A stretch of 64,000 nt of DNA from Octopus sinensis (taxonomy: Eukaryota): the NCBI RefSeq assembly GCF_006345805.1, contig NC_043007.1:17918001-17982000 (forward strand), read 5' to 3'. The position numbers and the translations under genes are program-made. How positions within the stretch are numbered: position 1 is the first letter of the stretch; each line of letters starts with the position of its first letter. This document shows positions 5,321 through 61,788 of this stretch, in pieces. The notes beneath the pieces are model-generated. The model was not told the DNA's origin, did no database searches, and was given only the letters and a program-made list of their open reading frames with translations.

Positions 5321-7054
<1,734 letters not shown>

Positions 7055-14899: not shown

Positions 14900-16460
14900 T
14901 TGAACTCTTTCATCAAACCGACCGTTACTGGTTTGAAGATATACTCTGCTCAAGGCATCTGCAACAATCAGTTCTACGGGGTCTGGAGGTAACTTGAAGA
15001 TCATACTTCTGTAGACGCAGCAACATTCTCTGCAACCTCTGAGGAGCTCTACAAAAGGGTCTCTGAAATATGATTTCAAGGGTCTTGTGATCAGTTTCTA
15101 TTTGAACTGTTTTCCCGTCTCACATCCATGTAGGATCCCTAGCATCTTTTTCTCAGTCTGCGCGTACTTATTTTGTGCACTTGATTTGTCAGTGACTTCG
15201 AAGCGAACGCTACAAGCCTGTCAGCTTGCATCAACACTGCTCGGCCCTTCGGAGCTTGTATCCACTGATAACGTTACTGGCTTTGTAACATCAAAGTACT
15301 GTAGTACCTATATTTTTACTACCCACATGGGGCCAAACACAGAGAGGACAAACAAGGACAGACAAACGGATTAAGTCGATTATATCGACTCCAGTGCGTA
15401 ACTGGTACTTAATTTATCGACCCCGAAAGGATGAAAGGTAAAGTCGACCTCGGTGGAATTTGAACTCAGAACGTAGCGGCAGACGAAATACCTATTTCTT
15501 TACTACCCACAAGGAGCTAAACACAGAGGGGATAAACAAGGACAGACAAACGGATTAAGTCGATTATATCGACTCCAGTGCGTAACTGGTACTTATTTAA
15601 TCGACCCCGAAAGGATGAAAGGCAAAGTCGACCTCGGCGGAATTTGAACTCAGAACGTAGTGGCAGACGAAATACGGCTATGCATTTCACCCGGTGTGCT
15701 AACGCTTCTGCCAGCTCGCCGCCTTGAGTACTGTAGGACCGTAGTCTCTGTCACTCTTTGTTTCAAATTCTTTAAACATGTTTGCTACTCTTCTTCCCAG
15801 TGCCATGCAATGCCCTTCGGCAATATAACTCTCGTAGAGCTGCAGTTCCATTGGAGAGATTTGGCATGAACTTTCTCAGATACTGTACTATATCGAGGAA
15901 TATCATCAGATCTGTTTTGTTTTCAGGCTCCGGCATTTCTCGGATAGCTTTCACCTTTTCAAAATCTGGCTCCAGTCACTTATCAGTGAGATGCCATACA
16001 TATACGACCTCCGTCACTCCCAGCTTGCATTTCTTCATATTCAGTTTCAGGCCACTTGCCGTTCTGTTCAGAACGGCATGCAATCTTTCATCATGTTTCT
16101 TGACATCTGTATCCCGCACCAAAGTGTCATCGACAATAGATTCTGTGCCTGATAAGCCTTCTAGGATCTGTGACATTGTTCTCTGAAATACCTCCGACGC
16201 TGACTTCACTCCGAATGATAGTCGTGCGAATCAGTATCTACTGAACGGGGTATTGAAGGTACACAACTTGGAACTGCTTCCATCAAGTTGCATCTGCCAA
16301 AATACACACTCTGCGTCAAGAACGGTGAACAGCTCGGCACCTGACATTCTTGACATAATTTCCTCAGCAGTTCTCTTGGGATAATGTTCCCTTTTTATAG
16401 CACAATTCAGATATTTTGGGTCTATACAGATCTTAATCTTATTTGGTTTCACTACTGTCA
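14900..16460 (-). mobile_element. Ty3/Gypsy pol relic (RT + RNase H), interrupted by a SINE-1 dimer at 15308-15725
   Basis: VVKPNKIKICIDPKYLNCAIKREHYP, LFTVLDAECVFWQ, LCTFNTPFSRY, KSASEVFQRTMSQILEGL..IVDDTLV, GLKLNMKKCKLG, FLDIVQYLRKFMPNLS; multiple stops and frameshifts; no LTRs seen. Confidence 0.9.
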
Positions 16461-18849: not shown

Positions 18850-21800
18850 TGTTGAAAAGAAAGAAAAATCGAGCGAGTAAGCGAGGAGAAGGTAGAAAAA
18901 TGTCTAAAGCCCATCTGGCAGGATATAACATATCTAGCCAGAGGGGAAAAAATTCAGTACAATCGAGGTACACCAAAAAGACATTGGAATTGCACAATTG
19001 CACTCGGTAAAATCCTTGGAAACAGAAGACGTGATTTTAATACAAATATACATGAGGACATCCAAAATACGAATACCAAAGATCCCACCTCAAGTCGACC
19101 CTATGTGGTTGGTGGCGGCAGTCCTGGCAGAAAGAGTAGATGAGGTAATAATACTTCAGGTTACCGTTTCAGAAAAGGCAAATTGGACCGGCCACACGGT
19201 ACACCTGTTAATTCAAACAGAATAGGCTGTATTAGAACAGCTTCCAGAAAAAATAGAAGTTGGGGAGGAGTTCCTCAACGTTTTTGGTGAGGGGCGTAAA
19301 CCTCGAGGTTTTCAGTGTGGCCAGCTGGGCCATATGAAAAAAATACTGTAAAGAAGGCGAGGAGGAATCTGAAGATGAGGAGGAAGAGAAAGAAAAACAA
19401 ACAGAAGAAAAAAAGTTACTAGCAAAAGAAAAATGGAAAATGAAAACCAACCTAAACAAGTAGAACCAGGATCAAAAAGAAAAAAAAACAGCAAAAAGAG
19501 TCCAACCAAAAATAACAAAGAAAGAAGTAGCGGGCAGAGGGATTGTGGCACTTCATAGTAAAAATGATGATTTAATGAGAGAGATGAAAACAAAAAAATT
19601 AACCACCAGGATAGCAGAACTGTCAGACAAAAATTATGAAGTATATATCTTGCAAACAACTTGCACATGCAAGTGCTACCAGTTAAAAGCTCCGTAGACC
19701 GGAAGCTAGATAAAAAGACTCATAACATTTTATTAAATACTTATAGAAAGTCTGTATCGGTAACGAGACTGGATTTTAACCAATCTATTTTCCAAGATTT
19801 GCCACCTCCGACCCTGTGTCAAGAAAAGGTGGAGGTGCAGGTAAGTTATGTATATTCACATTGGTTGTGTAAATGTCCGTGGCCTGATATCTAGCTGGAA
19901 GCAAGGACGCTTCCTAAATGACATCAGGTCAAGAAAATTGGGTGTGGTTGTTGCAACGGAAACTCGGGTAAAAGGGCCAAGAGATCTGCTCCGCCTCCTG
20001 AACGACTATGAGAAATACGTTTCTCCAAGCCGGGCGGGAGGTTGGGGTGGGGTGTTGGTCCTTCTAAAAAGAAACCGGGTAGCCGAGAAAACGTTGTTTT
20101 TTTTCTGACCCAGAAGGCAGGTTGGTCGTTCTTGACCTGGCATTCAGTTGTGGCAAGATAATCAGGCTAGTTGCTATTTATGCACCCAACATTACGGGCC
20201 CGCAAAGTGAATATTTTCGTGACCTGGGCAAGTTCCTGGCCACATCAGACTCGCTAGTATTGATAGGAGACACACACACAGATTGTCTTGGCTCGAACAT
20301 GAACAGAAAATGTAACCCGGGCTTACGGGATCAGCTAGGTCACTTTCAGCTAGCAGATCCATATAGGTTGGAACACCCGAACACTCCACAGTGGACGTGG
20401 TCAAATAGTGACGGGTCTTCCAAAACATATCTAGATAGGATTTTAATTAGAGAAACAGATAAGTCCATAGCCGAGTGTCCACAGTTTTTTCTAGTCAGCT
20501 ACAGTGACCACAAGATGGTTACCTGTAAACTGACAGTAGATAAATTGCATAGTCAGGGATCTGGCTACTGGAAATTCAATACGTCCCTTTTGGCGATTGA
20601 GGAGTACTGAAAGCGGATCGAGATGTTAATACAGAGGGCATTAACAGGTACCATCATTAATAACAAATGGTGGTACGCCCTAAGAAGAGCCATCAAATAT
20701 GAGTCTATTAGGTTTAGCATAAGTTTAGCTAAGAAGGGACGCAGAATAGGAGATGGTCTAGTTAAGGAACTAGAAGCCTGGAGGACTGGTAATGCGGACC
20801 AAGCGAGGGTGAAAAGACAGGAGTTAAACCAGCATATTGAAGCCTAACACATGGGAAGTATTGCCAGAGCTAAGTTACGTGCGATGGGAAGTGAAGGAAT
20901 CAAGGCCGCTGGATGGACCCGAGTGGTGAAAGCTCGGCAAAGAAATAGTACCAGTATTCGGTTTTTGACGAGTCAAAATGATGTCTTGGTAAACGAACCT
21001 GAGAAAATGTGTAAGGCCTTTCGGGAGTACTTCGCCCGTGAGGACTTTCTTGCCGGGCTGCCGTGTCTCTCGGGGTCGAATGCGGAATTTTGCGAAGGGC
21101 CAATCACGCCTGTGGAGGTGATGGAGGCTTTGGCCGACTGTAAAGCGGGTAAGTCGCCGGGACTTGATGGTCTTCCGTACGAGCTGTATAAATGTCTGCC
21201 AAACTTGTTCGGGCATCTATTAGCTGACGTGTACGTGAACTGGCAACAGAATGGGTTTATCCCCAGATCTGTGCGTCGGAAAGGACCTGGATAAGGGGGA
21301 TGTTATAGAGAATTTCAGGCCCATCACTGTTAAACGCAGAAGTGAAGATTTTGGCTACGGTCTTAGCAAAAAGGTTGACGCGTGTTGCGAATGGTATAGT
21401 CGGGGAGGCATAGACATGTGTCATTCCAGGCAGAACCATTCATGATAATCTCTTCCTTATACGCTATACCATAGAGAGGGTTGGTAATAAATCTGGCAAA
21501 GGTGGGGCATTGGTACATTTGGACCAGTCTAAGGCTTTTGATAGGGTTGACCATCGATACCTGGCGACTGTGCTTGCGCGGTTCGGCCTGGGCCTTAGCT
21601 TCCTCAGGTGGTTCATCGCTCTGTATCACAGCATTGACTCGATAGTTTTCTTTCAAAGTGGTTCTGCATCAGACGGTCGGTTCGTCCAGGAAGTCCGCTC
21701 TCACCACTTTTGTATGTTATGGTTCTCGAGCCCCTACTGCGATGGTTGAGTGGCATCCCGAGAGAACCAGGTCTAGAGGAATTTGTTACAGCTTACGCGG

Positions 21801-23427
21801 ATGATATCACTATCAGCATAACCTCAGTAGCACGCCTACGTGAAGTGGGTAAGACTATTGAAGCTTACGAGGAAGTGGCATGAGCTAAGATTAACCGGGA
21901 AAAGTCGGCACCTGGGTTGGCAAGTCGATGCCTTCAGACAGCATTGTTGGGTGCTGGACGGAGGGACCGGCTAAGTTGTTGTGAGTTTGGTTCGGACCAG
22001 GCCTCCAGATAGAGAAGAACTGGACGGAGGTATTGAGCAGGGTGGCTGCAGAAGTCAAGACCTGGTCTAGGCGGTGGCTAATCCTGAAAGGGAGGACGGA
22101 GGTGGCCAATGTGTTTATCGCATCGGTCATTACCTACCGCCTGATCGTTGTGCCATGTCCGGATTCGTGGGTGATCAGGTTGGAGAGACAGCTCTTTCGC
22201 TTTTTGTGGGAGGGCAGTTCGCCACTTGTGAAACGCTCTGTCTGCTGTCAAAAGCCTTTAAAGGGAGGTTTAGGGATGCTTTAGTTAACGATGCGCAGGC
22301 ATGCTTTGAGGTTGAGGCAGCTCTGGATTCTCCTGGATAGTGAACGGGTGTGGTCTCCACTGGCCAGACATATGTTCCCTGAGTTCAAAAGTTTTTGCGA
22401 AGAGGAAGCCTGGTGTTCTCGTAGACCGAGATCGAGTGAATGGTATAAAGAGTGCCGTAAGGCCCTCTTACTATTCCGGCGCTCGGGCAACGCCAGCGGT
22501 GGGGGTCCTACACGTTTTTTATATAGTGTGTTGGTAGAGTCTGAATGTGACGATGGCCTGGGAGCGACTTTAGGTCTCTGGTTTATTCAACTAAACAGCC
22601 TGTTTCATCGTACATTCGGGTTGAGAACGTTGAACAATTTCCAAAAGTCCTTGACCTGGCAATGTTACAGGGGTGCCTTGCCCGTTTGGGATAAACTCGC
22701 AAGACATGGAAAGTCTCACTCTCCGACCTGTTATAAAAATTGACCCACCGGAATCCTTAACAAACGAAGGTAAGAATTGTTTTCTCACTGTTGTTGCAAT
22801 AGCGAAAGAGGCAGAATGGAAGACTAGAGCAGAGGCGCAATGGCCCAGTGGTTAGGGCAGCGGACTCGCGGTCATAGGATCGCGGTTTCGATTCCCAAAA
22901 CGTGGAGTGCTCTGCCACTTACACGTTAATTTCACGAGCAGGCTGTTCCGTTGATCGGATCAACCGGAACCCTCGTCATAACCGACGGAGTGCTTCCAAA
23001 AAAAAATGGAAGACTAGGATAAAAGGGATTAAGAACTTTATCTCTGGCCACGAGTTAAGACTGTATTCCACTTTCCATTTGGAAAGGAAAATGTGGCTGG
23101 AGAAGAGATGCCTGTCGAAGAGTGTGTTCAAAAAAAGAAGGAAACGTGTTGCACGAGTGCAGTGCGTGTAAGGAACCATGTGAATAGGCTACAGAAGAAA
23201 GACAAGAGATGAAAGAAGTACCAGCGATAGATCGGAGCTTATGGGGTCGGAGCATGGCCTGATCATCGTTACATTTGTATCATATTTGTATTGTGTATGT
23301 CATTCGATTTTTATATATTTTATATAATTTTTATATTCATATTTATGTAATATCACGACGTGTTACTGATCCCAATCAGTTATTTTGTCCCATTCTTTGT
23401 GTAGCACCTTGTGGATAATAAACAAAT
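18850..23427 (+). mobile_element. Decayed near-full-length Tx1/L1-clade LINE (ORF1 knuckle; ORF2 APE endonuclease + RT; 3' UTR)
   Basis: ORF1 FGEGRKPRGFQCGQLGHMKKYC; APE motifs IGCVNVRGL, VVATET, VAIYAPN, YLDRILI, SDHKMV, GYWKFNTSLL; RT KSPGLDGLPYELY, NFRPIT, HLDQSKAFDRVDH, AYADDIT; C-terminal FQKSLTWQCYRGALPV; ORF2 stop at 23171; many frameshifts; SINE-3 insert at ~22825-22998 with TSD aatggaagactag. Confidence 0.9.
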
Positions 23428-24945: not shown

Positions 24946-27066
24946 ATAGGTATTTCATCTGCTGTTACGTTGAGTTCAAATTCCGCCGAAGTCGACTTTG
25001 CCTTTCATCCTTTCGGGGTCGACACAAATATATAATTCATAATTTCTTATATTTAGGCGGCGAGCTGGCAGGAACGTTAGCACGCCGGGCGAAATGCTTA
25101 GCGGTATTTCGTCTTCCGTTACGTTCTGAGGTCAAATTCCGCCGAGGTCGACTTTGCCTTTCATCCTTTCGGGGTTGATAAATTAAGTACCAGTTACGCA
25201 CTGGGGTCGATGTAATCGACTTAATACCTATGTCTGTCCTTGTTTGTCCCCTCTGTGTTTAGCCCCTTGTGGGTAATAAAGAAATAGGTATTTCGTCTTC
25301 CGTTACGTTCTGAGGTCAAATTCCGCCGAGGTCGACTTTGCCTTTCATCCTTTCGGGGTCGATAAATTAAGTACCAGTTACGCACTTGGATCGATATAAT
25401 CGACTTAATCCGTTTGTCTGTCCTTGTTTGTCCTCTCTGTGTTTAGCCCCTTGTGGGTAGTAAAGAAATAGGTATTCGTCTGCCGCTATGTTCTGAGTTC
25501 AAATTCCGCCGAGGTCGACTTTGCCTTTCATCCTTTCGAGGTCGATAAATAAGTACCAATTACGCACTTGGATCGATATAATCGACTTAATCCGTTTGTC
25601 TGTCCTGTTTGTCCTCTCTGTGTTTAGCCCCTTGTGGGTAGTAAAGAAATAGGTATTCGTCTGCCGCTATGTTCTGAGTTCAAATTCCGCCGAAGTCGAC
25701 TTTGCCTTCATCCTTTCGGGGTCGACACAAATATATAATCATAATTTCTTATATTTAGGCGGCGAGCTGGCAGGAACGTTAGCACGCCGGGCGAAATGCT
25801 TAGCGGTATTTCGTCTTCCTTTACGTTCTGAGGTCAAATTCCGCCGAGGTCGACTTTGCCTTTCATCCTTTCGGGGTTGATAAATTAAGTACCAGTTACG
25901 CACTGGGGTCGATATAATCGACTTTATACCTATGTCTGTCCTTGTTTGTCCCCTCTGTGTTTAGCCCCTTGTGGGTAATAAAGAAATAGGTATTTCGTCT
26001 TCCGTTACGTTCTGAGGTCAAATTCCGCCGAGGTCGACTTTGCCTTTCATCCTTTCGGGGTCGATAAATTAAGTACCAGTTACGCACTTGGATCGATATA
26101 ATCGACTTAATCCGTTTGTCTGTCCTTGTTTGTCCTCTCTGTGTTTAGCCCCTTGTGGGTAGTAAAGAAATAGGTATTTCGTCTGCCGCTATGTTCTGAG
26201 TTCAAATTCCGCCGAGGTCGACTTTGCCTTTCATCCTTTCGAGGTCGATAAATTAAGTACCAATTACGCACTTGGATCGATATAATCGACTTAATCCGTT
26301 TGTCTGTCCTTGTTTGTCCTCTCTGTGTTTAGCCCCTTGTGGGTAGTAAAGAAATAGGTATTTCGTCTGCCGCTATGTTCTGAGTTCAAATTCCGCCGAA
26401 GTCGACTTTGCCTTTCATCCTTTCGGGGTCGACACAAATATATAATTCATAATTTCTTATATTTAGGCGGCGAGCTGGCAGGAACGTTAGCACGCCGGGC
26501 GAAATGCTTAGCGGTATTTCGTCTTCCTTTACGTTCTGAGGTCAAATTCCGCCGAGGTCGACTTTGCCTTTCATCCTTTCGGGGTTGATAAATTAAGTAC
26601 CAGTTACGCACTGGGGTCGATGTAATCGACTTAATACCTATGTCTGTCCTTGTTTGTCCCCTCTGTGTTTAGCCCCTTGTGGGTAATAAAGAAATAGGTA
26701 TTTCGTCTTCCGTTACGTTCTGAGGTCAAATTCCGCCGAGGTCGACTTTGCCTTTCATCCTTTCGGGGTCGATAAATTAAGTACCAGTTACGCACTTGGA
26801 TCGATATAATCGACTTAATCCGTTTGTCTGTACATGTTTGTCCTCTCTGTGTTTAGCCCCTTGTGGGTAGTAAAGAAATAGGTATTTCGTCTGCCGCTAT
26901 GTTCTGAGTTCAAATTCCGCCGAGGTCGACTTTGCCTTTCATCCTTTCGAGGTCGATAAATTAAGTACCAATTACGCACTTGGATCGATATAATCGACTT
27001 AATCCGTTTGTCTGTCCTTGTTTGTGCTCTCTGTGTTTAGCTTCTTGTGGGTAGTAAAGAAATAGG
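24946..27066 (+). repeat. SINE-1-derived higher-order tandem array (~705 bp x 3)
   Basis: Spacer gacacaaatatataattcataatttcttatattt recurs at 25021, 25724 and 26431; each period = full SINE + two ~184-bp truncated units + partial unit, with diagnostic variants in the same order. Confidence 0.9.
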
Positions 27067-34819: not shown

Positions 34820-36050
34820 ATCACATTTCCTTATACCTCGACCGCATCCTGTCCCCCTTAGTCAAAGCCCTCCCTTCCCACATACATGATACCAACCACG
34901 CCCTCCGTCTCTTCAATTCCTTTTCCTTCCCTTCCAGCCCCTCACACCTCCTCTTCACCCTTGACATCAAATCCCTGTATACGGTAATTCCACAACGACG
35001 GTCTCCTAGCTATCCAACACTTCCTAGACCGTCGTCCCGACCCCACCCCTAGCATTCCCACCCTTCTCCGCCTGGCAGAGCTCGTCCTAACCCTCAACTG
35101 TTTCACGTTCGCCGGGGAAACGTACCAATAGATGTCTGGGGTCGCGATGGGAACGAGAATGGGCCCCAATTTCGCCAATCTCTTTGTTGGCTACATTGAG
35201 GCCCAAATATTCTCCCAATTCTCCGGGCCGACCCCAGAACTATACGGTCGTTACACAGACGACTGTATAGGCGCCACCTCCCTTTCCCGCGAACAACTCT
35301 GCCACTTCATCTCTTTCCTCTCTAACTTAACCCCTCTCTACAATTCACTTCCACCATATCCAATACTTCCGTTAACTTCCTTGATATCTCACTCAGCATC
35401 GACCACCCTTCCCACTCTCTCACCACCTCCGCCTTCTTCAAACCCACGGATTTCCACCCCTATCTCAACTTCTCCTCCTCCCATCCCTTCCACACCAAAC
35501 GGGCCATCCCCTACTCCCAGTTCCTCCGCCTCCGACGCTTGTGCAGCCAGGATTTCGAGACTCAGTCTCAATACCTGGCCCGCCTGTTCAGGCTTCGAGG
35601 ATACCCACCAACCCTGGTCTTGAACGCCCTCGCCCGCGCTCGTCGCATCGACCGCACCACAGCCCTTTCTCCTTCCACTCACCCACCCCCCAACCGCACA
35701 CCCTTTCCCCTCCTTTTCCACCCCTCTACTCTACCCCTTCGTCGGAAGATACTTCGTGCCTTCCGTCGTCTCCAGCTCGATTCCACGACCCACCCCATTT
35801 TCCCCAACCCACCCCTGTCCTCCTTCAAACGAGCCCGGAATCTACGCGACCTCCTGGGATGTTCGTCTACGGTCCAATTCTCCCGTCGCACGTCACTTCC
35901 GCTCGGGCAGCCATTCCCCCAATGACATCTCGGTGTTTGGTCTTGCCCCACACAACGGCTCTCCACAATCTAGGCTTCACTTGGAGCAACGGCTCATATT
36001 CCTTCTACAGACTCTAACCCCACACGGACTCAACACAGCCCCCTCCTCTT
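34820..36050 (+). mobile_element. Penelope-like element relic (RT + C-terminal part of GIY-YIG endonuclease)
   Basis: LFTLDIKSLYTVIP, GVAMGTRMGPNFANLF, YGRYTDDCIG, SSSHPFHTKRAIPYSQFLRLRRLCS, RGYP, SFKRARNLRDLL, PVARHF..EQRLIFLLQTLTPHGLN; frameshifted; the GIY-YIG N-terminal half appears deleted. Confidence 0.9.
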
Positions 36051-36139
36051 AGTGACTGCGCTCCACTTCTCCCTACTAGCATCTTTTATTTTTTATTTAT
36101 TATTTTTTATTTTTTATTTTATTTTTTATTTTTTATTTT

Positions 36140-37925
36140 TTATAATTGTCCTTAGGCAGTCACACACACACACATACTCACGTACCCACGAACACACCTA
36201 CCTCCAACACACCACACACACACAACGTACATGCACATGTACGCACACATACTTCCACACCTATACACACACCCACACACCCCCACGCGCACACACACAT
36301 ATGCACGTGCACACACACCAGGGACAATACTCACACAGATACGCACACTCCTATAAACACCTAGCTGAGACGCACAGATACACGCACGTAAGCGCACACA
36401 CGCACACAGGCACTCGCATGTATCTTACGCCCACACAACTCCAAACCCCCCCACACGCATACATTCACACACACACATACATACATACACACACATAATA
36501 TATACATAGATACATTCATACATACATACATACATACATACACACACGCATACATACATACATACATTCATACATACATACACACACACATACATACATA
36601 CATACATACATACATACATACACACATACATACACACGCATACATACATACATACACACATACATACATACACACACATACATACACACACACATACACA
36701 CATACATACACACACACATACACACACACATACACACATGCATACATACATACACACATACTTACATACACAGACGCATACATATACATACATACACATA
36801 CACACATACATACATACACGCATACATACACACATACATACATAGACATATATACATACACACACACATACATATACATACAGACACACACATGCACACA
36901 TACACGCATGCACACATACATACATACACATACATACACACACACATACACACACATAATACTATACACACATACACACACATACACACATACATACATA
37001 CATACACACACGCATACATATACATACATACATACACATGCACACACACACTTACACACATACACCCGTACATACATACACACACACTTACATACACACA
37101 CATACATACTTACACACATACACACATACATCCATACACACACGCATACATATACATACATACACATACACACACACATACACACATACATACATACACA
37201 TACATACATACACACGTACACACACACATACATAGATACATAGATACATACATATACAAACATACATATACATACATACACACACACATACACACACACA
37301 TACACACACACGCACGCACACATACATACATACACACACATACATACACACACATACATACATACACACACACACACTTACACACATACACACATACATA
37401 CACACACACACACATACATACATACATACATATATACATACATACACACACATACACACACATACACAGACACATACACACACATACATACATACATAAG
37501 CACATACATACACACACCTATACACACATACACACACACACATACACACATATATATATACATACATACACACACATACACACATACACGCATGCACACA
37601 TACATACATACATACACACACACATACATACACTACATACATAGATACATACATACATACACACACATACATATACATATATACGTACACATACGCACAT
37701 ACACACATACACGCATGCATAAATACATACATACACACATACATACATACATACACACACACACTTAAACACATACACACACACATACATACATACGTAC
37801 GTACATACATACATACACACATACATACACACACATACATACATACATACATACATACATACATACATACATACATACATACACACATACACACACACAT
37901 ACACACATACATACATACACACACG

Positions 37926-37964
<39 letters not shown>

Positions 37965-37985
37965 ATATATGTATATAACTATATA
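36140..37985. repeat. Giant compound (CA)n/(CATA)n microsatellite ending in a CA/TG foldback
   Basis: ~1.8 kb of mixed CA, TA and CATA units; strand switch at cacacgtgtgtg ~37924. Confidence 0.95.
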
Positions 37986-38004
37986 AACTGTGGTTTATAT
38001 ATAT

Positions 38005-38717: not shown

Positions 38718-39820
38718 TTGCAGCGTGGAAGGTGTTTATAAGCCATTCAGAAAGCACACAAAGACCGTTAGATACACTTCAACATTTAAATTTAATTTGT
38801 CAAAATATTTTCGTTCAAGGACAGACAAACGGATTAAGTCGATTATATTGACCCCAGTGCGTAACTGGTACTTAATTTATCGACCCCGAAAGGATGAAAG
38901 GCAAAGTCGACCTCAGCGGAATTTGAACTCACAACGTTGCGCCAGACGAAATACCGCTAAGCATTTCGCCCGGCGTGCTAACGTTTCTGCCAGCTCGCCG
39001 CCTTACAGTGAAAAAATACTGTCTCTCTTGATATGTCAAAGTAATATTACAGATAAGAAAATCTTTCTTATTTTTTTTTTTTTTAAAAAAAGAAGAAACT
39101 ACCCAATGAAAGGGTTGCATTTCTATTTTGACATTTTCCTTTTGATTCTGTGTGTATGTATGTAGTAAAGGGTACACGTTTTGCTTCTTCACAGATGTAT
39201 TCTTTCATATGTATGAGTGTGTGCGTGCTTGTATGTGTGCGTGTGTACACGCGTGTGTGTGTGTGTGCGTTTATATGAAAATATTTGTGTGAGTTTCAAC
39301 GTCTGGTTACGTAAGCATGAGAAAAATTTGAGCCAAGAGCAATAAATATTTCTGGAAATATGACTTTTATTTTCCATTAAAAAAAATATATATTTGTTCG
39401 ACATTCTGCGAGTTACAGTAAAAGAGAAATAAATCATCCATGTATTATCAAAATACAATCAAACTAAGAAATACTTTTTTTTCCCACCTACCTCGTTTTC
39501 CTCATCTTACATCTATATTTGCTCCCATAAAAAAGGCTTTATTGTTACAAATGCTTTTTATATGGAGTAAAGATAGGAAGACATATTTCTATTCACTATT
39601 ATTAATCCATTGTGAAGTTCTGATAGCATTCTTAACTAAAAAGTGAAACCTATTAATATATTCATGGATTCAATCAAAACCGTCTGAATAGGCTTCCTGT
39701 TTCCCACACATATACAATGAATAATTAAGAATATTTTTATTTCACCGCATTCTGGTTCTAGTATGCCCCACCTATTGTTTTTTTTTTTTGTCGTAGTGTG
39801 AATTCAAGACGCATGAGTAC

Positions 39821-39930
39821 TATATAAACTTACGTCATGTGCGCCGCCTAACACTTACCGGATTGCTTACCGAGTTGACTACTGCTCTTGTACTTACCGG
39901 ATTGCTTACCGAGTTGACTACTGCTCTTGT
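39821..39930 (+). promoter_or_regulatory. Putative core promoter and 5' UTR of the Cys-repeat gene
   Basis: TATATAAA 39821-39828, TTACGTCA (CRE/ATF-like half site) 39830-39837, perfect 39-bp tandem duplication 39853-39891/39892-39930, ATG at 39975. Confidence 0.55.
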
Positions 39931-39974
39931 TCTTCAATTTGTCTCTCTATGTATAGCAAAACAACACATCTAAT

Positions 39975-42900
39975 ATGAAATCTGTAGTATATTTACTCAC
40001 TGTTGCTGTTATTTTTTTGCTTGAAGAGATTGATGGCAACCAAATTCAAAGCTCGAATTTAAGTTGTGCTCTAGTGCCTGGACGAAGTAATTCGACCTAT
40101 TATGAACCAGTTTGGGACTATATTTGGATTCGACGTAGTTGCATGTTTGGCAGAGTTTTCAGTGACCGCTATTGCTTATGCATACCAACACAACTCATGA
40201 GAAATACTCGTCTAAATACACCAAATACTTGCATATTTCGAGGTTCAAAGACTTACACCAGAAGAATTGATCCAAAAGATAGCTATTATCAAGAACGTGT
40301 AAAAACGAGAAAATGGGCACCGAAAACTTGTACAAGTGGATTAGTTTTCAGTCCGACACACTGCCGTTGCATTGAAGATAGTCGTGAAACGTGTCAATAT
40401 CCAGGCGGTATTACCAGAACACGTAAACGAGATACTGATGTGAATTATTTCCAACAGCTAACAAACAGCAACACATGGGAAAGAAAAAGGTGTTACAGTG
40501 GTGCTACCTTCAGTCTAACTAAATGTTATTGCACTTTCGGTGGTTCATCAGTCATTGTTACAACGCCTGAACCTGAAAATGATATTAAAATATGTAAACA
40601 TCCCAAGTATGGATATTTCCGTAAACGGGATTCAAACCCGCAGTTTTATTTTCAGATCAATAACAATAAAGCATGGGAGAAGAGAGCTTGCGCAGTCGGC
40701 GGCACATTCAACAGCGCCATCTGTGATTGTACTTATGTGAAACCAACAAGCGAATCGGAGACTACACCAAAGGTCGAACCTGAAATTCCTCAAAAGTTTT
40801 GTTGGGATGCACTTTCAAAAACACGACGAGGAACATTTAGAGATGAACGTTATTATTACGAACTGAAAGGCAATACATGGAAGGTGATAGCTTGTCAAAA
40901 TGGATATATTTTTTCTCACGACAGATGTTGTTGTGTTTTAAAATCACAAATAACGACCCCTAGAACAGAACCGACAGGTGAACCTGAAACGGAGCCGACA
41001 GGTGAACCTGAAACACCATTCGAAGTATGTCCGCATAAGCCTTCTCAGTCTATAAGAAGAGCCACTACAAACCCACAGATTTACGAGCAGAAGACCACAG
41101 GAGGCAAATGGGTGAAAATATCATGCGAAGCTGCAAATCAATTCAACGTCAAAAAATGTTGTTGTGTTCCGACAGGTACAACTGCACAACCGGAGGGAAC
41201 CACTAAATTTTCCCCAAAGTACTGTCTGGATAAATTGTCAAGTAAACGACGAGCAACATTTAGAAATGAACGTCATTATTACGAACTGACAGACAGTTTA
41301 TGGCGGCTGAAAGCTTGTAAAAATGGAAAAATTTTCTCTTACGAGGAGTGTTGCTGTGTTTTAAAATCAAAACAAACAACGAATCCTTGGACAGAACCGA
41401 CAAGTGAACCTAAAACTGAGCCGACAAGTAAACCCGAAACAGAACCAACAGGTGAACCTGAAACGGAGCCGACAGGTGAACCTGAAGCACAATTCGAAAT
41501 ATGCCCACATAAGTCTTCTCAGTCTATAAGAAGAGGCACTGCAAACCCACAGTTTTACGAGCAGATGAACAAGCAAGGCAAATGGGAGAGAAAATTATGT
41601 AACGGTGCAAGTCGATTCAACGCCAAAAAATGTTGTTGTGTTTCGCCAGGTGAACCCGAAACAGAACCGACAGGTGAACCTGAAACACCATTCGAAGTAT
41701 GTTGGCATAAGTCTTCTCACTCTAAAAGAAGAGCCACTGCAAACCCACAGATTTACGAGCAGAAGACCACAGGAAGCAAATGGGAGAGAAAATTATGTAA
41801 CGGTGCAAGTCGATTCAACGCCAAAAAATGTTGTTGTGTTTCGCCAGGTGAACCCGAAACAGAACCGACAGGTGAACCTGAAACGGAGCCGACAGGTGAA
41901 CCTGAAACACCATTCGAAGTATGTTGGCATAAGTCTTCTCAGTCTAAAAGAAGAGTCACTGCAAACCCACAGATTTACGAGCAGAAGACCACAGGAGGCA
42001 AATGGGAGAGAAAATTATGTAACGGTGCAAGTCGATTCAACGCCAAAAAATGTTGTTGTGTTTCGCCAGGTGAACCCGAAACAGAACCGACAGGTGAACC
42101 TGAAACGGAGCCGACTGGTGAACCTGAAACACCATTCGAAGTATGTTGGCATAAGTCTTCTCAGTCTAAAAGAAGAGTCACTGCAAACCCACAGATTTAC
42201 GAGCAGAAGACCACAGGAGGCAAATGGGAGAGAAAATTATGTAACGGTGCAAGTCGATTCAACGCCAAAAAATGTTGTTGTGTTTCGCCAGGTGAACCCG
42301 AAACAGAACCGACAGGTGAACCTGAAACACTATTCGAAGTATGTCAGCATAAGCCTTCTCAGTCTATAAGAAGAAGCACTACAAACCCACAGATTTACGA
42401 GCAGGTGAACAAGCAACGCAAATGGGAGAGAAAATTATGTAACGGTACAAGTCGATTCAACGCCAAAAAATGTTGTTGTGTTTCGCCAGGTGAACCCGAA
42501 ACAGAACCGACAGGTGAACCTGAAACGGAGCCGACAGGTGAACCTGAAACACCATTCGAAGTATGTTGGCATAAGTCTTCTCAGTCTAAAAGAAGAGTCA
42601 CTGCAAACCCACAGATTTACGAGCAGAAAACCACAGGAGGCAAATGGGAGAGAAAATTATGTAACGGTGCAAGTCGATTCAACGCCAAAAAATGTTGTTG
42701 TGTTTCGCCAGGTGAACCCGAAACAGAACCGACAGGTGAACCTGAAACACCATTCGAAGTATGTCCGCATAAGCCTTCTCAGTCTATAAGAAGAGGCACT
42801 AAAAACCCACAGATTTACGAGCAGGTGAACAAGCAACGCAAATGGGAGAGAAAATTATGTAACGGTACAAGTCGATTCAACGCCAAAAAATGTTGTTGTG

Positions 42901-44448
42901 TTTCGCCAGGTGAACCCGAAACAGAACCGACAGGTGAACCTGAAACACCATTCGAAGTATGTCCGCATAAGCCTTCTCAGTCTATAAGAAGAGGCACTAA
43001 AAACCCACAGATTTACGAGCAGATGAACAAGCAACGCAAATGGGAGAGAAAAATATGTAACGGTGCAAGTCGATTCAACGCCAAAAAATGTTGTTGTGTT
43101 TCGACAGGTGAACCCGAAACAGAACCGACAGGTGAACCTGAAACACCATTCGAAGTATGTCCGCATAAGCCTTCTCAGTCTATAAGAAGAGGCACTAAAA
43201 ACCCACAGATTTACGAGCAGATGAACAAGCAACGCAAATGGGAGAGAAAAATATGTAACGGTGCAAGTCGATTCAACGCCAAAAAATGTTGTGTGTTTCG
43301 CCAGGTGAACCGAAACAGAACCGACAGGAGAACCTGAAACACCATTCGAAGTATGTCCGCATAAGCCTTCTCAGTCTATAAGAAGAGGCACTAAAAACCC
43401 ACAGATTTACGAGCAGATGAACAAGCAACGCAAATGGGAGAGAAAAATATGTAACGGTGCAAGTCGATTCAACGCCAAAAAATGTTGTTGTGTTTCGACA
43501 GGTGAACCCGAAACAGAACCGGAAGGTAAACCCGAAGGAGAACCTGAAATTGCCGAAAAGATTTGTCATCATAAACCGTCAAAAATACAACGAAAAACAT
43601 TTAAAGTTGAACTTTTTTATTATGAAAAGACGGGCAATACATGGATGCTGAAGGTTTGTCAAAATGGATATATTTTCTCTTACGAGGAGTGTTGTTGTGC
43701 TTTAAAATCAAAACAAATAGCGAATCCTGAAACAGAACCGGAAGGCAAACCTGAGTCAGAACCGGAAGGTGAACCAGAGGGAGAACCGAAACCAGAAAAT
43801 GAAGTACAACACGCATATTGTATAGATGTGATATCTCGGGCTATAAGGAAAAATACAACGAACCCAAAGCAGTATAAGCAGTTGTCATCATCATTCAAAT
43901 GGGAAGTAAAATATTGTCCACATTCAAAACGATTCAGTTTTAAAATATGCTGTTGCGTTCCGGTAACACCTGGACAACCAGAGGGAGAGCCGGAGGGTAA
44001 ACCTGAAACAGAACCGGAAGGTAAACCTGAAACAGAACCTGAAACAGAACCGGAGGGTAAACCTGAAAAACCCTTTAAAATATGTCCGCATAAGCCTTCT
44101 GAGTCTATAAGAAGACCCACCACAAACCCACAGTTTTACGAGCAGATGACCATAAGAAACGAATGGGTAAACATGTCATGTGGAGATGCAAGTCGATTCG
44201 ACGTCGATCAATGTTCTTGTATTCCGACAGAGAAAACTACACCTACTACAACGCAACGATCATATGACACTGCACAAGCAAATATTACGTGTAAGGTCGG
44301 GAATGGACCTCTTCGGAAAACAGACTCGGACTTACGTCGTTATTCAGAAAAGGTAGCAGGAAGATGGGAAGATAGGATTTGCTACAGTGGTGGTATATTC
44401 AACAAACTAATTTGTGGTTGTGTTTATTTGAAAAAAATACATAAATAG
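39975..44448 (+). CDS. Secreted multi-module cysteine-rich protein (~1491 aa if two 1-bp deletions are corrected); 21 modules resembling a reduced chitin-binding type-2 fold with P/E/T linkers
   Basis: ORFs 39975-43337 and 43417-44448 are one gene: unit 16 has tgttgtgt instead of tgttgttgt and gaaccg instead of gaacccg. N-terminal signal peptide MKSVVYLLTVAVIFLLEEIDG; module pattern C-x~17-Y/F-x-Q/E-x5-7-W-x4-C-x2-(G/A)-x2-F-x4-C-x-C; no introns needed. Confidence 0.85.
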
Positions 44449-45355
44449 AAACCGATATTCCTGTGTCAACTTTGTACAGTCTGGATATATTCATAAATGC
44501 GGTAAGAACACATTGTTTTCATCAAAAGACAATATTTGGAGCATGGGGACATCATCCTGTCCAAATATACTGTTTTTCCATTATGTAAGGTTTGATTGTA
44601 CTTTCAACTAGAAAATATTACATCAAGTTTGGCCGTTGGTAGAATCTGGAAATAAGTGATCATCTATGTAAAAAAAAAACGTGTGTGTGTGTGTGTGTAG
44701 AATGAGCTTAAGGAACAGAACCAAAGATTGTTCAGATTCTTCTATTCGTATATAAAACAAAAACTTTTAAGGGGGCGAACAATATGCTATATTTGTATTT
44801 TTAGTCTTTCTTTATTTTACCGTAAAGTTCATTTCGTTTAGCGATTGATTGTTGTAGTAAATTAAATATTTTTCCATAATGGTTTCTGCTCCCTAATTGA
44901 AAAAATTGTTGAAGAGAAGCAATATCTGTGAAATGCAAAAAAAAAAAGTGTTATGTTACTGGAAAGCATCCAGAAGTTTTGTAACTCAAGAAAAATGTAT
45001 CTGTTAAATGCAAATTGCTGAGAGCTCATTAATGAGATGTACTTTATTTATTTACTTTTTTTTTTAATTGGTTTTTGGTAAATACTTCACATTTATACAA
45101 GTTGACTTTGGTTTTTACCGGAAATTTTTGACACGATTTTAAAATTAAATGGGGGTGGGATGAAAAACAAGCAGAAAAACATTTATATCCCCGACGTTTT
45201 GTTTATATTTATAAATTTCTTTTTAAGTTGTGTACCAATACGTGTATCATCACTCGTCTGTTTCGAACATGTTGCAAATTTTTGCGAGCAGATTTTCTTT
45301 TTGTTTGACCCATTAACGTTCATGTAAAATGAATAAATTTTGTTTTCCGTTTATA

Positions 45356-46815
<1,460 letters not shown>

Positions 46816-47102
46816 TTAGAAAAAAACCCACCTTTTATCAATTCAAAATGAACAATAGTTATTCTACCATTATATACGTTTTTATTATTCTTTTCGCAAT
46901 TTACTCAATCATTGATATTTTATTATTTTAATTTTAATATTCTATTATATGTAATTTTCTAGATGGTGTAATTTAATTTTGAATTGATAAGGGTGTTTTT
47001 TTTTTCTAATTTTATATATATATTGTGTGAAATTTGATTTAGTATTTCTAAATTGAATTTTTTTCCCTGTAAGTTTGGATGTATATTCCCTCAAATAATT
47101 AT

Positions 47103-61569: not shown

Positions 61570-61788
61570 CCTATTTCTTTACTACCCACAAGGGGCTAAA
61601 CAAGGACAGACAAACAGATTAAGTCGATTACATCGACCCCAGAATGTAACTGGTACTTATTTAATCGACCCCGAAAGGATGAAAGGCAAAGTCGACCTCG
61701 GCGGAATTTGAACTCAGAACGTAGCGGCAGACGAAATACCGCTAAGCATTTTGCCCGGCGGGCTAACGATTCTGCCAGCTCGCCTGCG
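61570..61788 (-). mobile_element. SINE family 1
   Basis: TSD cctgcggcttaaata. Confidence 0.85.

What the first reader, a model, noticed from the sequence alone, without database searches (positions are those of the whole stretch)
39975..44448. Large intronless secreted protein of 21 novel cysteine modules: candidate cephalopod structural or chitin-binding biomaterial protein
Seen: signal peptide, then 21 modules of ~45 aa with conserved C...Y/F-x-Q/E...W-x4-C-x2-G/A-x2-F-x4-C-x-C. Terminal modules (1-4, 20-21) have 4 Cys (CxC) while central modules 5-19 have 5 (CCC), leaving an odd cysteine. Modules are K/R-rich and linkers are acidic (EPTGEPET or EPEGKPET), giving a block-charge architecture. 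No TM segment is evident. Established: the C-x2-G-x2-F-x4-C end matches chitin-binding type-2 (peritrophin-A/CBM14) domains, which normally have 6 Cys; peritrophins alternate such domains with P/T-rich linkers. Inference: a reduced 4-Cys CBM14-like fold, multivalent for chitin or another polysaccharide, cross-linked through the spare cysteines and possibly coacervating; plausible in beak, radula, sucker or gut cuticle, or egg/spermatophore coats.
Basis: partly seen in the sequence, partly recalled or inferred. Interest (0 to 1): 0.82.

Follow-up and report, generated by a model that had tools for sequence, protein, structure and literature searches.

The report
Octopus 21-module chitin-binding-like secreted protein
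This is a real but unstudied octopus gene for a large secreted protein made of 21 copies of a stripped-down version of a known chitin-binding fold, joined by acidic spacers. The fold is now well supported, but whether it binds chitin and where it acts are still unknown.

Summary
The 21-module architecture is real. The signal peptide, the four invariant Cys plus W/F/Y, the CxC ends versus CCC centre, the basic modules with acidic linkers, and the absence of a TM segment are all confirmed.

The reading frame is not continuous in this window. Two 1-nt gaps at about 43291 and 43311 split it into ORFs 39975-43337 and 43309-44448.

The window is identical to Octopus sinensis LOC115217256 ("uncharacterized protein", at least 24 RefSeq isoforms that skip modules). 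O. vulgaris has an intact 20-21-module ORF.

- A profile search retrieves canonical CBM14 proteins.
- hhalign gives 93-96% probability.
- Two AlphaFold models (pLDDT 91) have CBM14 structures as top Foldseek hits.

The modules are not unique. They belong to a mollusc-wide 4-Cys family (cuttlefish, abalone, mussels, oysters) that Pfam mostly misses.

Chitin binding is unproven. The canonical Cys2/3/6 and the key exposed Trp are absent, and the closest structural relatives, Der p 23 and EHEP, do not bind chitin. Tissue, cross-linking and coacervation are untested.

Verdict: a new variant of a known kind, of moderate interest.

The parts
39821..39828 (+). TATATAAA, a TATA-like box about 150 nt upstream of the ATG. 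It is consistent with a promoter directly in front of a single coding exon.
   Evidence: sequence only; not tested
39853..39934 (+). 39-nt unit repeated 2.1 times (97% identical) between the TATA-like box and the ATG. It lies in the presumed 5' leader.
39975..40064 (+). Start codon and N-terminal signal-peptide-like segment (MKSVVYLLTVAVIFLLEEIDG...). It is conserved in O. vulgaris and O. bimaculoides.
40065..40730 (+). Modules 1-4. They are diverged, end in CxC and have short non-repetitive linkers.
40800..41639 (+). Modules 5-8. They end in CCC and alternate between type B (RYYYEL...NGxIFS) and type A (NPQIYEQ...ASRFN). The EPTGEPET linkers begin here.
41700..43292 (+). Modules 9-16. These are young, near-identical tandem copies (periods 198/222/420 nt, 92-98% matches) of two subtypes (CWHKSS... 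and CPHKPS...). Module 16 is cut at its CCC by the first 1-nt gap.
43287..43314 (+). Frame-break zone. One T is missing from TGTTGTTGT (about 43291) and one C from GAACCCGAA (about 43311) relative to copies 14, 15 and 17, a net -2. ORF1 then runs out of frame to a stop at 43337.
43309..44448 (+). Second reading frame (+1 relative to the first). It holds modules 17-19 (CCC), modules 20-21 (CxC), EPEGKPET-type linkers and the TAG stop. The C-terminus ...VYLKKIHK is identical to the RefSeq protein.
42948..43106 (+). Module 15 with flanks, the sequence modelled by AlphaFold2. The model has pLDDT 91.2 and is a six-strand all-beta fold.
40380..40541 (+). Module 3 with flanks, the second modelled sequence. 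The model has pLDDT 90.8, and the top seven Foldseek PDB hits are all CBM14 structures.

Best explanation
The locus is the Octopus sinensis gene LOC115217256. It encodes a roughly 1,480-residue secreted protein in one genomic stretch.

Architecture: a signal peptide is followed by 21 small disulfide-bonded beta modules. These are divergent members of the CBM14 / peritrophin-A (chitin-binding type-2) fold. They are strung on extended, acidic Glu-Pro-Thr-rich linkers.

Shown here:
- the module count and pattern;
- homology to CBM14 at profile level and fold level;
- membership of a mollusc-wide 4-Cys module family;
- the charge alternation;
- orthologues in three Octopus species with different copy numbers.

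Inferred:
- The module keeps the canonical C4-C5 disulfide (C37-C50, with the F-to-Cys spacing of 7 as in canonical domains).
- It has lost canonical C2, C3 and C6, and ties the N-terminal Cys to a family-specific Cys two residues before C5 (C5-C48).
- The octopus-specific middle Cys of CCC (15 modules) is then unpaired and available for intermolecular disulfides or other thiol chemistry.
- Functionally the protein most likely acts like a peritrophin or invertebrate intestinal mucin. It would be a multivalent, protease-resistant extracellular matrix or mucus component whose many basic modules bind a polysaccharide scaffold, while the acidic linkers act as spacers. Chitin is the first candidate ligand.
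- The site of action is one of the octopus's chitinous or mucous surfaces (gut cuticle, beak/radula, sucker lining, stylet sac, egg coat).
- The frame break in this window is most likely an assembly or polishing error in near-identical repeats.

Confidence by component: real gene and CBM14-fold homology about 0.9; chitin as ligand about 0.45; frame break as artefact about 0.75.
For: - Identity: all tested RefSeq isoforms map to the window with 0 mismatched residues. Orthologues are O. vulgaris CAI9729694 (1457 aa, 20 modules, continuous), CAI9729692 (1521 aa, 21 modules) and O. bimaculoides LOC106876448.
- Module conservation.
- CBM14 link, profile search: a 53-column module profile searched against 1.84e9 proteins returns canonical multi-CBM14 proteins P0023 (E 1.9e-9), P0024 (2.9e-9), P0036, P0044 and P0048. 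Pfam confirms them as CBM_14 with 78-241 bits.
- CBM14 link, family members: P0013, P0014, P0018 and P0019 exceed Pfam CBM_14's gathering score.
- CBM14 link, profile-profile: hhalign gives 93.3% (E 2.8e-7) and 95.9% (E 5.8e-9).
- Fold: AF2 pLDDT is 91.2 and 90.8. Foldseek top hits are Der p 23, the CHIT1 CBM14, Der f 23, Blo t 12, a fungal CBM14 protein and Aplysia EHEP, with probability up to 0.99 and TM up to 0.69.
- Family breadth: Sepia pharaonis has four genes on one contig, and the module also occurs in Haliotis, Mytilus, Ostrea, Crassostrea, Pinctada and Bradybaena. Some are labelled 'Chitin-binding type-2 domain-containing' by UniProt.
- Charge blocks and lack of a TM segment.
- Frame break as artefact: both gaps shorten short homopolymers inside 95-98% identical repeats, the downstream 1,140 nt stay open with five intact modules and the conserved C-terminus, and the sister species has an intact frame.
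Against: - The octopus proteins themselves give no Pfam CBM_14 hit even at E up to 10. There is only a recurrent sub-threshold hit to Baculo_VP91_N.
- Only 6 of 61 single modules reach CBM_14 at E<=0.01.
- All Foldseek E-values are above 0.3 because the domain is tiny.
- The six-Cys pattern with C1-C3, C2-C6 and C4-C5 pairing is not present.
- The exposed Trp two residues after C5, required for chitin binding by CHIT1 (PMC4844120), is absent in 21/21 modules. Only 3 modules have any aromatic residue there.
- Der p 23 and EHEP, both among the best structural matches, are reported not to bind chitin (10.1101/2023.06.04.543649).
- The disulfide map could not be read because model coordinates are not returned.
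- No transcript, tissue or proteomic evidence was obtainable. No Logan transcript contig for this gene appeared in the searches, and no paper mentions the gene ids.
Confidence: 0.55

Rival explanations
1. The fold is the same but the ligand is different. The modules are CBM14-fold scaffolds that no longer bind chitin. Instead they bind another partner such as dietary polyphenols or xenobiotics (as Aplysia EHEP does), haem, sulfated or acidic glycans, or microbial surfaces (tachycitin-like antimicrobial lectin activity). The protein would then be a protective mucus, digestive-fluid or egg-coat factor rather than a chitin-matrix protein.
For: - The canonical chitin-contacting Trp is missing and modules are strongly basic (pI 9-10).
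- EHEP is among the best structural hits with rmsd about 1 A over 38-39 columns.
- EHEP and Der p 23 lack chitin binding, and the PAD family is said to serve several biochemical functions (10.1101/2023.06.04.543649).
- Paralogous modules differ mainly by non-synonymous changes in two loops. This would fit a diversifying binding surface.
Against: - The conserved aromatic positions Y23, W32 and F43 and the C-x2-G-x2-F motif are exactly those kept in chitin-binding CBM14 domains.
- Critical chitin-binding residues are in any case not conserved among proven binders (same preprint).
- The tandem-module plus linker layout is that of chitin-binding peritrophins.
- The dN/dS counts are too small to be significant.
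Confidence: 0.28
2. The O. sinensis copy is truly frameshifted, either as a null or truncated allele or as a young pseudogene. It would give at most a 16-module protein with a short out-of-frame tail.
For: - Two independent 1-nt gaps break the frame in the reference sequence.
- Every RefSeq model has to jump over the site through a 370-nt 'intron'.
Against: - Both gaps are homopolymer contractions within near-identical repeats, a typical long-read consensus error.
- There are no further stops or indels in the remaining 1,140 nt.
- The C-terminal modules are conserved across three species.
- O. vulgaris has a continuous 20-21-module frame.
Confidence: 0.2
3. The protein is a polyprotein precursor. 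In this reading the cationic Cys-rich modules are released as about 5-kDa peptides (antimicrobial or signalling), and the acidic linkers are neutralising pro-spacers, as in multi-copy antimicrobial-peptide precursors.
For: - There is strict alternation of basic modules (+8 to +10) and acidic spacers (-6 to -9).
- Dibasic RR/KRR/KK motifs are present.
- Tachycitin shows that a free CBM14-fold peptide can be antimicrobial (cited in PMC4844120, PMC6128652).
Against: - The dibasic motifs lie inside the disulfide-bonded module, and R14 is a conserved scaffold residue.
- Central linkers (VSPGEPETEPTGEPETPFEV) contain no basic residue and no conserved processing site at the module borders.
- Relatives in other molluscs have non-basic modules and S/D-rich linkers.
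Confidence: 0.06
4. The modules are not CBM14 at all. They would be Sushi/CCP-like, as UniProt names one O. bimaculoides entry, or an unrelated convergent small disulfide fold.
For: - The UniRef name 'Sushi domain-containing protein' is attached to A0A0L8GJI0.
- Four Cys and one Trp per module resemble CCP superficially.
- The structural E-values are weak.
Against: - There is no Pfam Sushi hit at E up to 10.
- No CCP structure appears among the top 50 Foldseek hits in either search, while 7-9 CBM14 entries do.
- The Trp lies between Cys1 and Cys2, not between Cys3 and Cys4.
- Sequence profiles connect to CBM14 with E 1e-7 to 1e-9.
Confidence: 0.03

Closest known systems
Peritrophins / invertebrate intestinal mucins (arthropod multi-CBM14 proteins)
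   Same: Both have a signal peptide, many tandem peritrophin-A-fold modules, Pro/Thr-rich linkers that are probably extended and possibly glycosylated, and no membrane anchor. Profile-level homology of the module is shown.
   Different: The octopus modules have 4 (or 5) Cys instead of 6 and lack canonical C2, C3 and C6 and the C-terminal Trp. The linkers are strongly acidic Glu-Pro repeats rather than Ser/Thr mucin domains. The host is a mollusc, and neither gut expression nor chitin binding has been shown.
Der p 23 / Der f 23 (dust-mite CBM14-fold allergens with two disulfides)
   Same: Der p 23 is the best Foldseek match for module 15 (prob 0.96, TM 0.59/0.64). It is a reduced CBM14 fold held by two disulfides and precedes or follows Pro/Thr-rich sequence.
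   Different: Der p 23 is a single-domain protein whose two disulfides sit at the canonical positions (PMC4844120). The octopus module lacks the partner of the first one and must use a new Cys. Der p 23 is reported not to bind chitin (10.1101/2023.06.04.543649).
[quoted passage not shown]
   Same: It is the top structural match for module 3 (prob 0.99, TM 0.69). It shares the C-x2-G-x2-F motif, a cluster of Cys at the C-terminal strand and a positively charged surface (PMC4844120).
   Different: CHIT1 has six Cys (C420-C440, C450-C463, C460-C462) and the essential Trp465. It is a single module appended to a catalytic domain.
Aplysia kurodai EHEP (three peritrophin-A domains; 8IN3/8IN6)
   Same: It is a secreted molluscan protein of tandem CBM14-fold domains and gives low-rmsd structural matches (about 1 A over 38-39 columns).
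   Different: EHEP has three canonical 6-Cys domains packed into a triangle. It binds phlorotannin rather than chitin and has no long linkers.
Uncharacterised mollusc 4-Cys module proteins (e.g. Sepia pharaonis CAE1286147/151/153/155, Haliotis rubra LOC124280987, Mytilus trossulus LOC134696250, Crassostrea gigas LOC105322316)
   Same: They share the module signature C-x10-15-Y-x-[EQ]-x6-W-x4-C-x2-G-x2-[FY]-x5-C-x-C. They often occur in tandem with charged low-complexity linkers and a signal peptide. This is the true family of the octopus protein.
   Different: They have 1-11 modules rather than 20-21. All 62 modules examined end in CxC, never CCC. The cuttlefish linkers are Ser/Asp/Glu-rich rather than Glu-Pro-Thr, and their modules are not markedly basic. 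None has a described function.
Tachycitin (horseshoe-crab antimicrobial chitin-binding peptide, CBM14)
   Same: It is a small basic CBM14-fold unit with chitin-binding and antimicrobial activity. This is a possible functional analogue for highly basic modules (knowledge from PMC4844120 and PMC6128652).
   Different: It is a single 73-residue peptide with five disulfides. It was not among the top 50 Foldseek hits here.

Membership tests
CBM14 / peritrophin-A / chitin-binding type-2 domain (Pfam PF01607) | Sequence match to the Pfam CBM_14 model above its gathering score (22.1 bits) | tested here: not met
   There is no CBM_14 hit at E up to 10 for either window ORF or for the O. vulgaris and O. 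bimaculoides orthologues. Only 6 of 61 family modules hit at E<=0.01. Relatives P0013, P0014, P0018 and P0019 do pass as whole proteins.
CBM14 / peritrophin-A / chitin-binding type-2 domain (Pfam PF01607) | Detectable homology to canonical CBM14 domains at profile level | tested here: met
   The module profile retrieves Pfam-confirmed multi-CBM14 proteins at E 1.9e-9 to 8.8e-4 in 1.84e9 sequences. hhalign against 17 canonical domains gives 93.3% (E 2.8e-7) and 95.9% (E 5.8e-9).
CBM14 / peritrophin-A / chitin-binding type-2 domain (Pfam PF01607) | Small distorted beta-sandwich fold | tested here: met
   AF2 models have pLDDT 91.2 and 90.8 and are all-beta. CBM14 structures take ranks 1, 2, 4, 11, 15, 19 and 21 and ranks 1-7 and 11. 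The E-values (0.3-5) are not significant on their own.
CBM14 / peritrophin-A / chitin-binding type-2 domain (Pfam PF01607) | Six conserved Cys paired C1-C3, C2-C6, C4-C5 | tested here: not met
   Only four Cys are invariant (C5, C37, C48, C50). hhalign places non-Cys residues opposite canonical C2 and C3, and there is no C6. C37 and C50 match C4 and C5 by spacing, and C48 is family-specific. The actual pairing is not testable because no coordinates are returned.
CBM14 / peritrophin-A / chitin-binding type-2 domain (Pfam PF01607) | Conserved surface aromatic (Trp) two residues after C5, needed for chitin binding in CHIT1 | tested here: not met
   Position C50+2 is S, P, L or E in 18 modules, F or Y in 3, and never W. 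The requirement is taken from PMC4844120.
CBM14 / peritrophin-A / chitin-binding type-2 domain (Pfam PF01607) | Binds chitin | not testable with these tools
   This needs recombinant protein assays. Fold members without chitin binding exist (10.1101/2023.06.04.543649).
Peritrophin / invertebrate intestinal mucin architecture | Signal peptide, tandem CBM14-type modules, Pro/Thr-rich linkers, no anchor | tested here: met
Peritrophin / invertebrate intestinal mucin architecture | Expressed by gut epithelium and incorporated in a chitinous gut lining | not testable with these tools
   No expression data were reachable, and no literature on the gene exists.
Mollusc 4-Cys CBM14-like module family (uncurated) | Signature C-x10-15-Y-x-[EQ]-x6-W-x4-C-x2-G-x2-[FY]-x5-C-x-C with significant profile match | tested here: met
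   Cuttlefish, abalone, mussel and oyster proteins match at E 2e-56 to 1e-3 with 2-11 stretches each. In the 61-module alignment the four Cys are invariant and W is at least 90% conserved.
Sushi / CCP domain | About 60 aa, C1-C3/C2-C4, Trp between C3 and C4, match to PF00084 | tested here: not met
   There is no Pfam hit and no CCP structure among the Foldseek hits. The Trp position also differs.

The most novel reading that the evidence does not exclude
The module defines an undescribed, mollusc-wide branch of the CBM14 fold with a rewired disulfide, in which the N-terminal Cys is clamped to a C-terminal CxC. Octopuses would have amplified it to about 21 copies and added one free thiol per module, creating a charge-patterned, redox-cross-linkable polyampholyte. 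That protein would serve as a new class of cephalopod structural or adhesive matrix protein for a chitinous tissue (beak, sucker lining, stylet, gut cuticle or egg coat). Copy number would evolve rapidly between sister species and might be tuned by exitron-like splicing within the linkers.
Probability: 0.2. Interest if true: 0.7.

Novelty: new variant of a known kind. Interest (0 to 1): 0.45.

Why it matters
- Cephalopod chitin-based materials (beak, radula, sucker lining, pen or stylet, gut cuticle) are models for bio-inspired composites, but few of their chitin-organising proteins are known.
- This gene and its relatives show that molluscs carry a divergent peritrophin-A lineage that standard domain models mostly miss. 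Chitin-binding repertoires in mollusc genomes and shell or cuticle proteomes are therefore probably under-counted.
- The octopus protein offers an extreme, easily expressed repeat design: basic lectin-like beads, acidic Glu-Pro spacers and one spare Cys per bead. It could be used to test how valency, charge patterning and thiol cross-linking shape a polysaccharide matrix.
- It is also a caution that a CBM14 fold does not by itself predict chitin binding.

Tried and rejected
- Direct Pfam, PDB-sequence and literature look-ups of the octopus protein gave nothing specific.
- The look-up of encoding contigs could not locate the RefSeq or O. vulgaris proteins, so no orthologous DNA or gene models were available and no cross-species dN/dS could be computed.
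- Literature searches for cephalopod chitin-binding, cuttlebone, sucker or beak proteins led only to Pif/LamG3-type proteins, an oyster ChtBD2 protein (a different gene) and a calponin-derived peptide. None is related.
- Sushi/CCP was rejected (see the membership test).
- Profile hits to a Legionellales MAG protein (P0020), CXCXC-repeat proteins and a carboxypeptidase-regulatory-domain protein were judged spurious. They match only the YxQ..GG.W or C..C.C stretch and lack the module's Cys pattern.
- Weak Pfam hits (DicB, PriC, Trypan_PARP, NESP55) reflect repeat composition.
- Low-probability Foldseek matches to beta-propellers, Tudor domains, polymerases and a clostridial protease light chain (prob <=0.15) are noise and were not followed.
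- The Mueller et al. Der p 23 paper could not be opened. Its result is cited second-hand.
- Disulfide connectivity and surface exposure could not be read because the structure tool returns no coordinates.

Full report
**1. What is in the sequence**

- The ORF listing finds an ATG-initiated ORF at 39975-43337 (1120 aa) and a second ORF in another frame ending at 44448. That second frame is open from 43309.
- A loose regular expression, and independently an HMM scan of all six frames, find 21 modules. Sixteen are in the first frame and five in the second, and there are none elsewhere in the 64 kb.
- An alignment of 28 modules (17 distinct window modules plus 11 from O. bimaculoides) has invariant C5, W32, C37, F43, C48 and C50, and near-invariant R14 and Y23.
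- Modules 1-4 and 20-21 end in CxC. Modules 5-19 end in CCC.
- The N-terminus is a typical signal sequence and is the only hydrophobic stretch.
- Modules sum to +140 charge over 955 aa and linkers to -91 over 477 aa.
- A TATATAAA lies about 150 nt upstream of the ATG.
- The central copies are young tandem repeats with periods of 198/222/420 nt and 92-98% matches.

**2. The frame break**

- Aligning the ends of copies 14-17 shows that copy 16 lacks one T in TGTTGTTGT and, 19 nt later, one C in GAACCCGAA.
- The finding's 'single intronless ORF 39975-44448' is therefore not literally true in this window.
- I judge an assembly error about three times more likely than a real lesion, for these reasons:
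  - Both gaps shorten short homopolymers inside nearly identical repeats.
  - The downstream 1,140 nt remain open with five intact modules and a conserved C-terminus.
  - O. vulgaris has continuous 1457-aa (20-module) and 1521-aa (21-module) products.

**3. Identity of the locus**

- The protein search returns only Octopus proteins as close relatives.
- Five RefSeq isoforms of Octopus sinensis LOC115217256 ('uncharacterized protein', some named 'titin-like') map onto the window's two frames with no mismatched residue. The window is therefore that locus.
- All isoforms are shorter (805-999 aa) than the genomic reading frames. They delete whole module-plus-linker units of 174, 372 or 1458 nt, and 36-nt linker units. 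They also jump 370 nt across the frame break.
- The repeated linker DNA ...ACAG|GTGAACC... looks like both a splice donor and an acceptor. These models may reflect exitron splicing, repeat-length polymorphism or alignment artefacts, and I could not decide which.
- Orthologues are O. vulgaris CAI9729692-4 and O. bimaculoides LOC106876448 (11 modules in the model).
- No paper in the searchable library mentions any of these identifiers.

**4. What the module is**

- Direct Pfam scans of the octopus proteins give no CBM_14 hit even at E up to 10. There is only a recurrent sub-threshold match to positions 110-156 of Baculo_VP91_N, and canonical CBM14 proteins hit that same region.
- A profile of the 28 modules searched with HMMER against 1.84 billion representatives gave 41 hits at E<=1e-3. 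They fall into three groups:
  - The octopus orthologues.
  - Proteins built from the same 4-Cys module, C-x10-15-Y-x-[EQ]-x6-W-x4-C-x2-G-x2-[FY]-x5-C-x-C. These come from Sepia pharaonis (four genes on one 270-kb contig), Haliotis, Mytilus, Ostrea, Crassostrea, Pinctada and Bradybaena, and a few are labelled 'Chitin-binding type-2 domain-containing' by UniProt.
  - Canonical multi-domain peritrophin-A proteins, which Pfam confirms at 78-241 bits.
- Several 4-Cys family members exceed Pfam's CBM_14 gathering score through matches to the C-terminal half of the model. One abalone protein carries canonical CBM14 domains, TSP1 repeats and 4-Cys modules side by side.
- Profile-profile comparison with 17 canonical domains gives 93.3% (E 2.8e-7) for the octopus modules and 95.9% (E 5.8e-9) for a 61-module family alignment.
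- AlphaFold2 models of module 15 and module 3 are confident (pLDDT 91.2 and 90.8) six-strand beta structures.
- Foldseek against the PDB puts CBM14 structures on top both times: Der p 23, the CHIT1 chitin-binding domain, Der f 23, Blo t 12, a fungal CBM14 protein and Aplysia EHEP. Probabilities reach 0.99 and TM 0.69, but E-values are only 0.3-5 because the domain is so short.
- No Sushi/CCP structure or Pfam hit appears, which rejects the 'Sushi' label attached to one UniProt entry.

**5. How it differs from canonical CBM14**

- Canonical peritrophin-A domains have six Cys paired C1-C3, C2-C6 and C4-C5 (bioRxiv 10.1101/2023.06.04.543649).
- CHIT1 has C420-C440, C450-C463 and C460-C462, and needs the exposed Trp465 for chitin binding (PMC4844120).
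- In the hhalign alignments the octopus Y-x-Q region lies opposite canonical C2 and C3, which are not Cys here. C37 matches C4.
- The F-to-Cys spacing of 7 identifies C50 with C5. No C6 follows.
- I infer that C37-C50 is the retained core disulfide. The N-terminal Cys, having lost its partner C3, would pair with the family-specific C48. This inference is untested.
- The middle Cys of CCC is found only in octopus. All 62 modules from other molluscs have CxC. It is the odd Cys in 15 modules.
- The position equivalent to Trp465 is never Trp and is aromatic in only 3 of 21 modules.
- The same preprint states that EHEP and Der p 23 do not bind chitin, and that proven binders use non-conserved residues.
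- The fold assignment is therefore strong, but the chitin-binding function is only a plausible default.

**6. Mechanism proposed**

- The protein would be a secreted, beads-on-a-string matrix or mucus protein.
- About 21 rigid, basic, lectin-like modules give multivalent attachment to a polysaccharide scaffold. Chitin is the first candidate.
- Glu-Pro-Thr linkers act as extended, protease-resistant, possibly O-glycosylated acidic spacers. They are compositionally like trypanosome EP procyclin, hence the Trypan_PARP hits.
- The spare thiols allow covalent network formation.
- The alternation of basic and acidic blocks could promote self-association.
- All of this is inference from architecture by analogy with peritrophins and intestinal mucins. 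Tissue and ligand are unknown.

**7. Rivals**

- A CBM14 scaffold with a non-chitin ligand, or a soluble protective role (0.28).
- A genuinely frameshifted allele (0.2; not exclusive of the others).
- A polyprotein precursor of cationic peptides (0.06). This is disfavoured because the linkers lack processing sites and the dibasic motifs are inside the fold.
- A non-CBM14 fold (0.03).

**8. Evolutionary notes**

- Copy number and subtype order differ between O. sinensis (21) and O. vulgaris (20-21), and the O. bimaculoides model has 11.
- Old module pairs show dN/dS below 1: 0.20 for modules 2-3 and about 0.5-0.7 for pairs with module 19.
- Many younger pairs show dN/dS above 1, but these rest on only 1-5 synonymous differences. 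This is suggestive of loop diversification and is not significant.

**9. Context**

- The gene sits alone among degraded non-LTR retrotransposon fragments, a SINE-like 190-bp element with more than 20 copies in the window, and long microsatellites.

**10. Verdict**

- The fold inference is right.
- The claim of a wholly novel module is overstated, and the functional story is untested.
- This is a new, strongly amplified variant within an uncurated molluscan branch of a well-known domain family, and it is of moderate interest.

Noticed in passing
window 41373-43515 (examples: 41688-41861, 42132-42503, 43146-43515): RefSeq isoforms of LOC115217256 remove exact module-plus-linker units, and the repeated linker DNA ACAG|GTGAACC resembles both splice sites. 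Some removed pieces are only 36 nt, too short for ordinary introns. Many of the 24+ isoforms may therefore be repeat-polymorphism or alignment artefacts rather than real splicing.
   Followed up: partly
window 41028-44220 (modules 6-20): Pairwise dN/dS between younger paralogous modules is often above 1 (for example 4.5 for modules 6-9 and 3.9 for 9-12). The changes cluster in two loops that distinguish the 'CWHKSS...QKTTGGK' and 'CPHKPS...QMNKQRK' subtypes. The counts are too small for significance.
   Followed up: partly
window 38816-39005, and more than 20 other sites (e.g. 486-672, 15537-15725, 25055-25242, 61601-61784): A dispersed SINE-like element of about 190 bp, 87-95% identical between copies. 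One copy lies about 1 kb upstream of the gene. It creates spurious shared 'ORF' N-termini at 527 and 38725.
   Followed up: partly
window 39853-39934: A 39-nt unit is duplicated 2.1 times (97% identical) between the TATA-like box and the start codon, in the presumed 5' leader. Its significance is unknown.
   Followed up: no
window 36000-38000 and 45350-47000: Kilobase-scale microsatellite blocks flank the gene. One is CA/TG-rich (GC skew -0.74) and the other TA-rich (GC 19-26%).
   Followed up: no
window 9723-10535 (-), 20122-22743 (+), 6065-6409 (+): Degraded retroelement pieces are present: zf-CCHC Gag-like ORFs and an Exo_endo_phos endonuclease fragment of a non-LTR retrotransposon. No other host gene was recognised in the window.
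   Followed up: partly
O. vulgaris protein P0068 (CAI9729692.1): The only O. vulgaris model that contains all 21 modules has an alternative N-terminus (MVSSYSI...) that lacks the signal peptide. This is probably a mis-modelled first exon.
   Followed up: no
Sepia pharaonis proteins P0013/P0054, P0015, P0018, P0067 (CAE1286147, 153, 155, 151): Four 4-Cys-module genes sit on one 270-kb cuttlefish contig. Their linkers are Ser/Asp/Glu-rich, reminiscent of acidic biomineral matrix proteins, so they are candidates for cuttlebone matrix components. This was not examined further.
   Followed up: no
protein P0020 (MFI4918195.1, Legionellales MAG): A bacterial repeat protein scored E 6e-12 against the module profile through a recurrent 'LLYQSINGGSW' stretch. 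It lacks the Cys pattern and was judged a chance, composition-driven match.
   Followed up: yes
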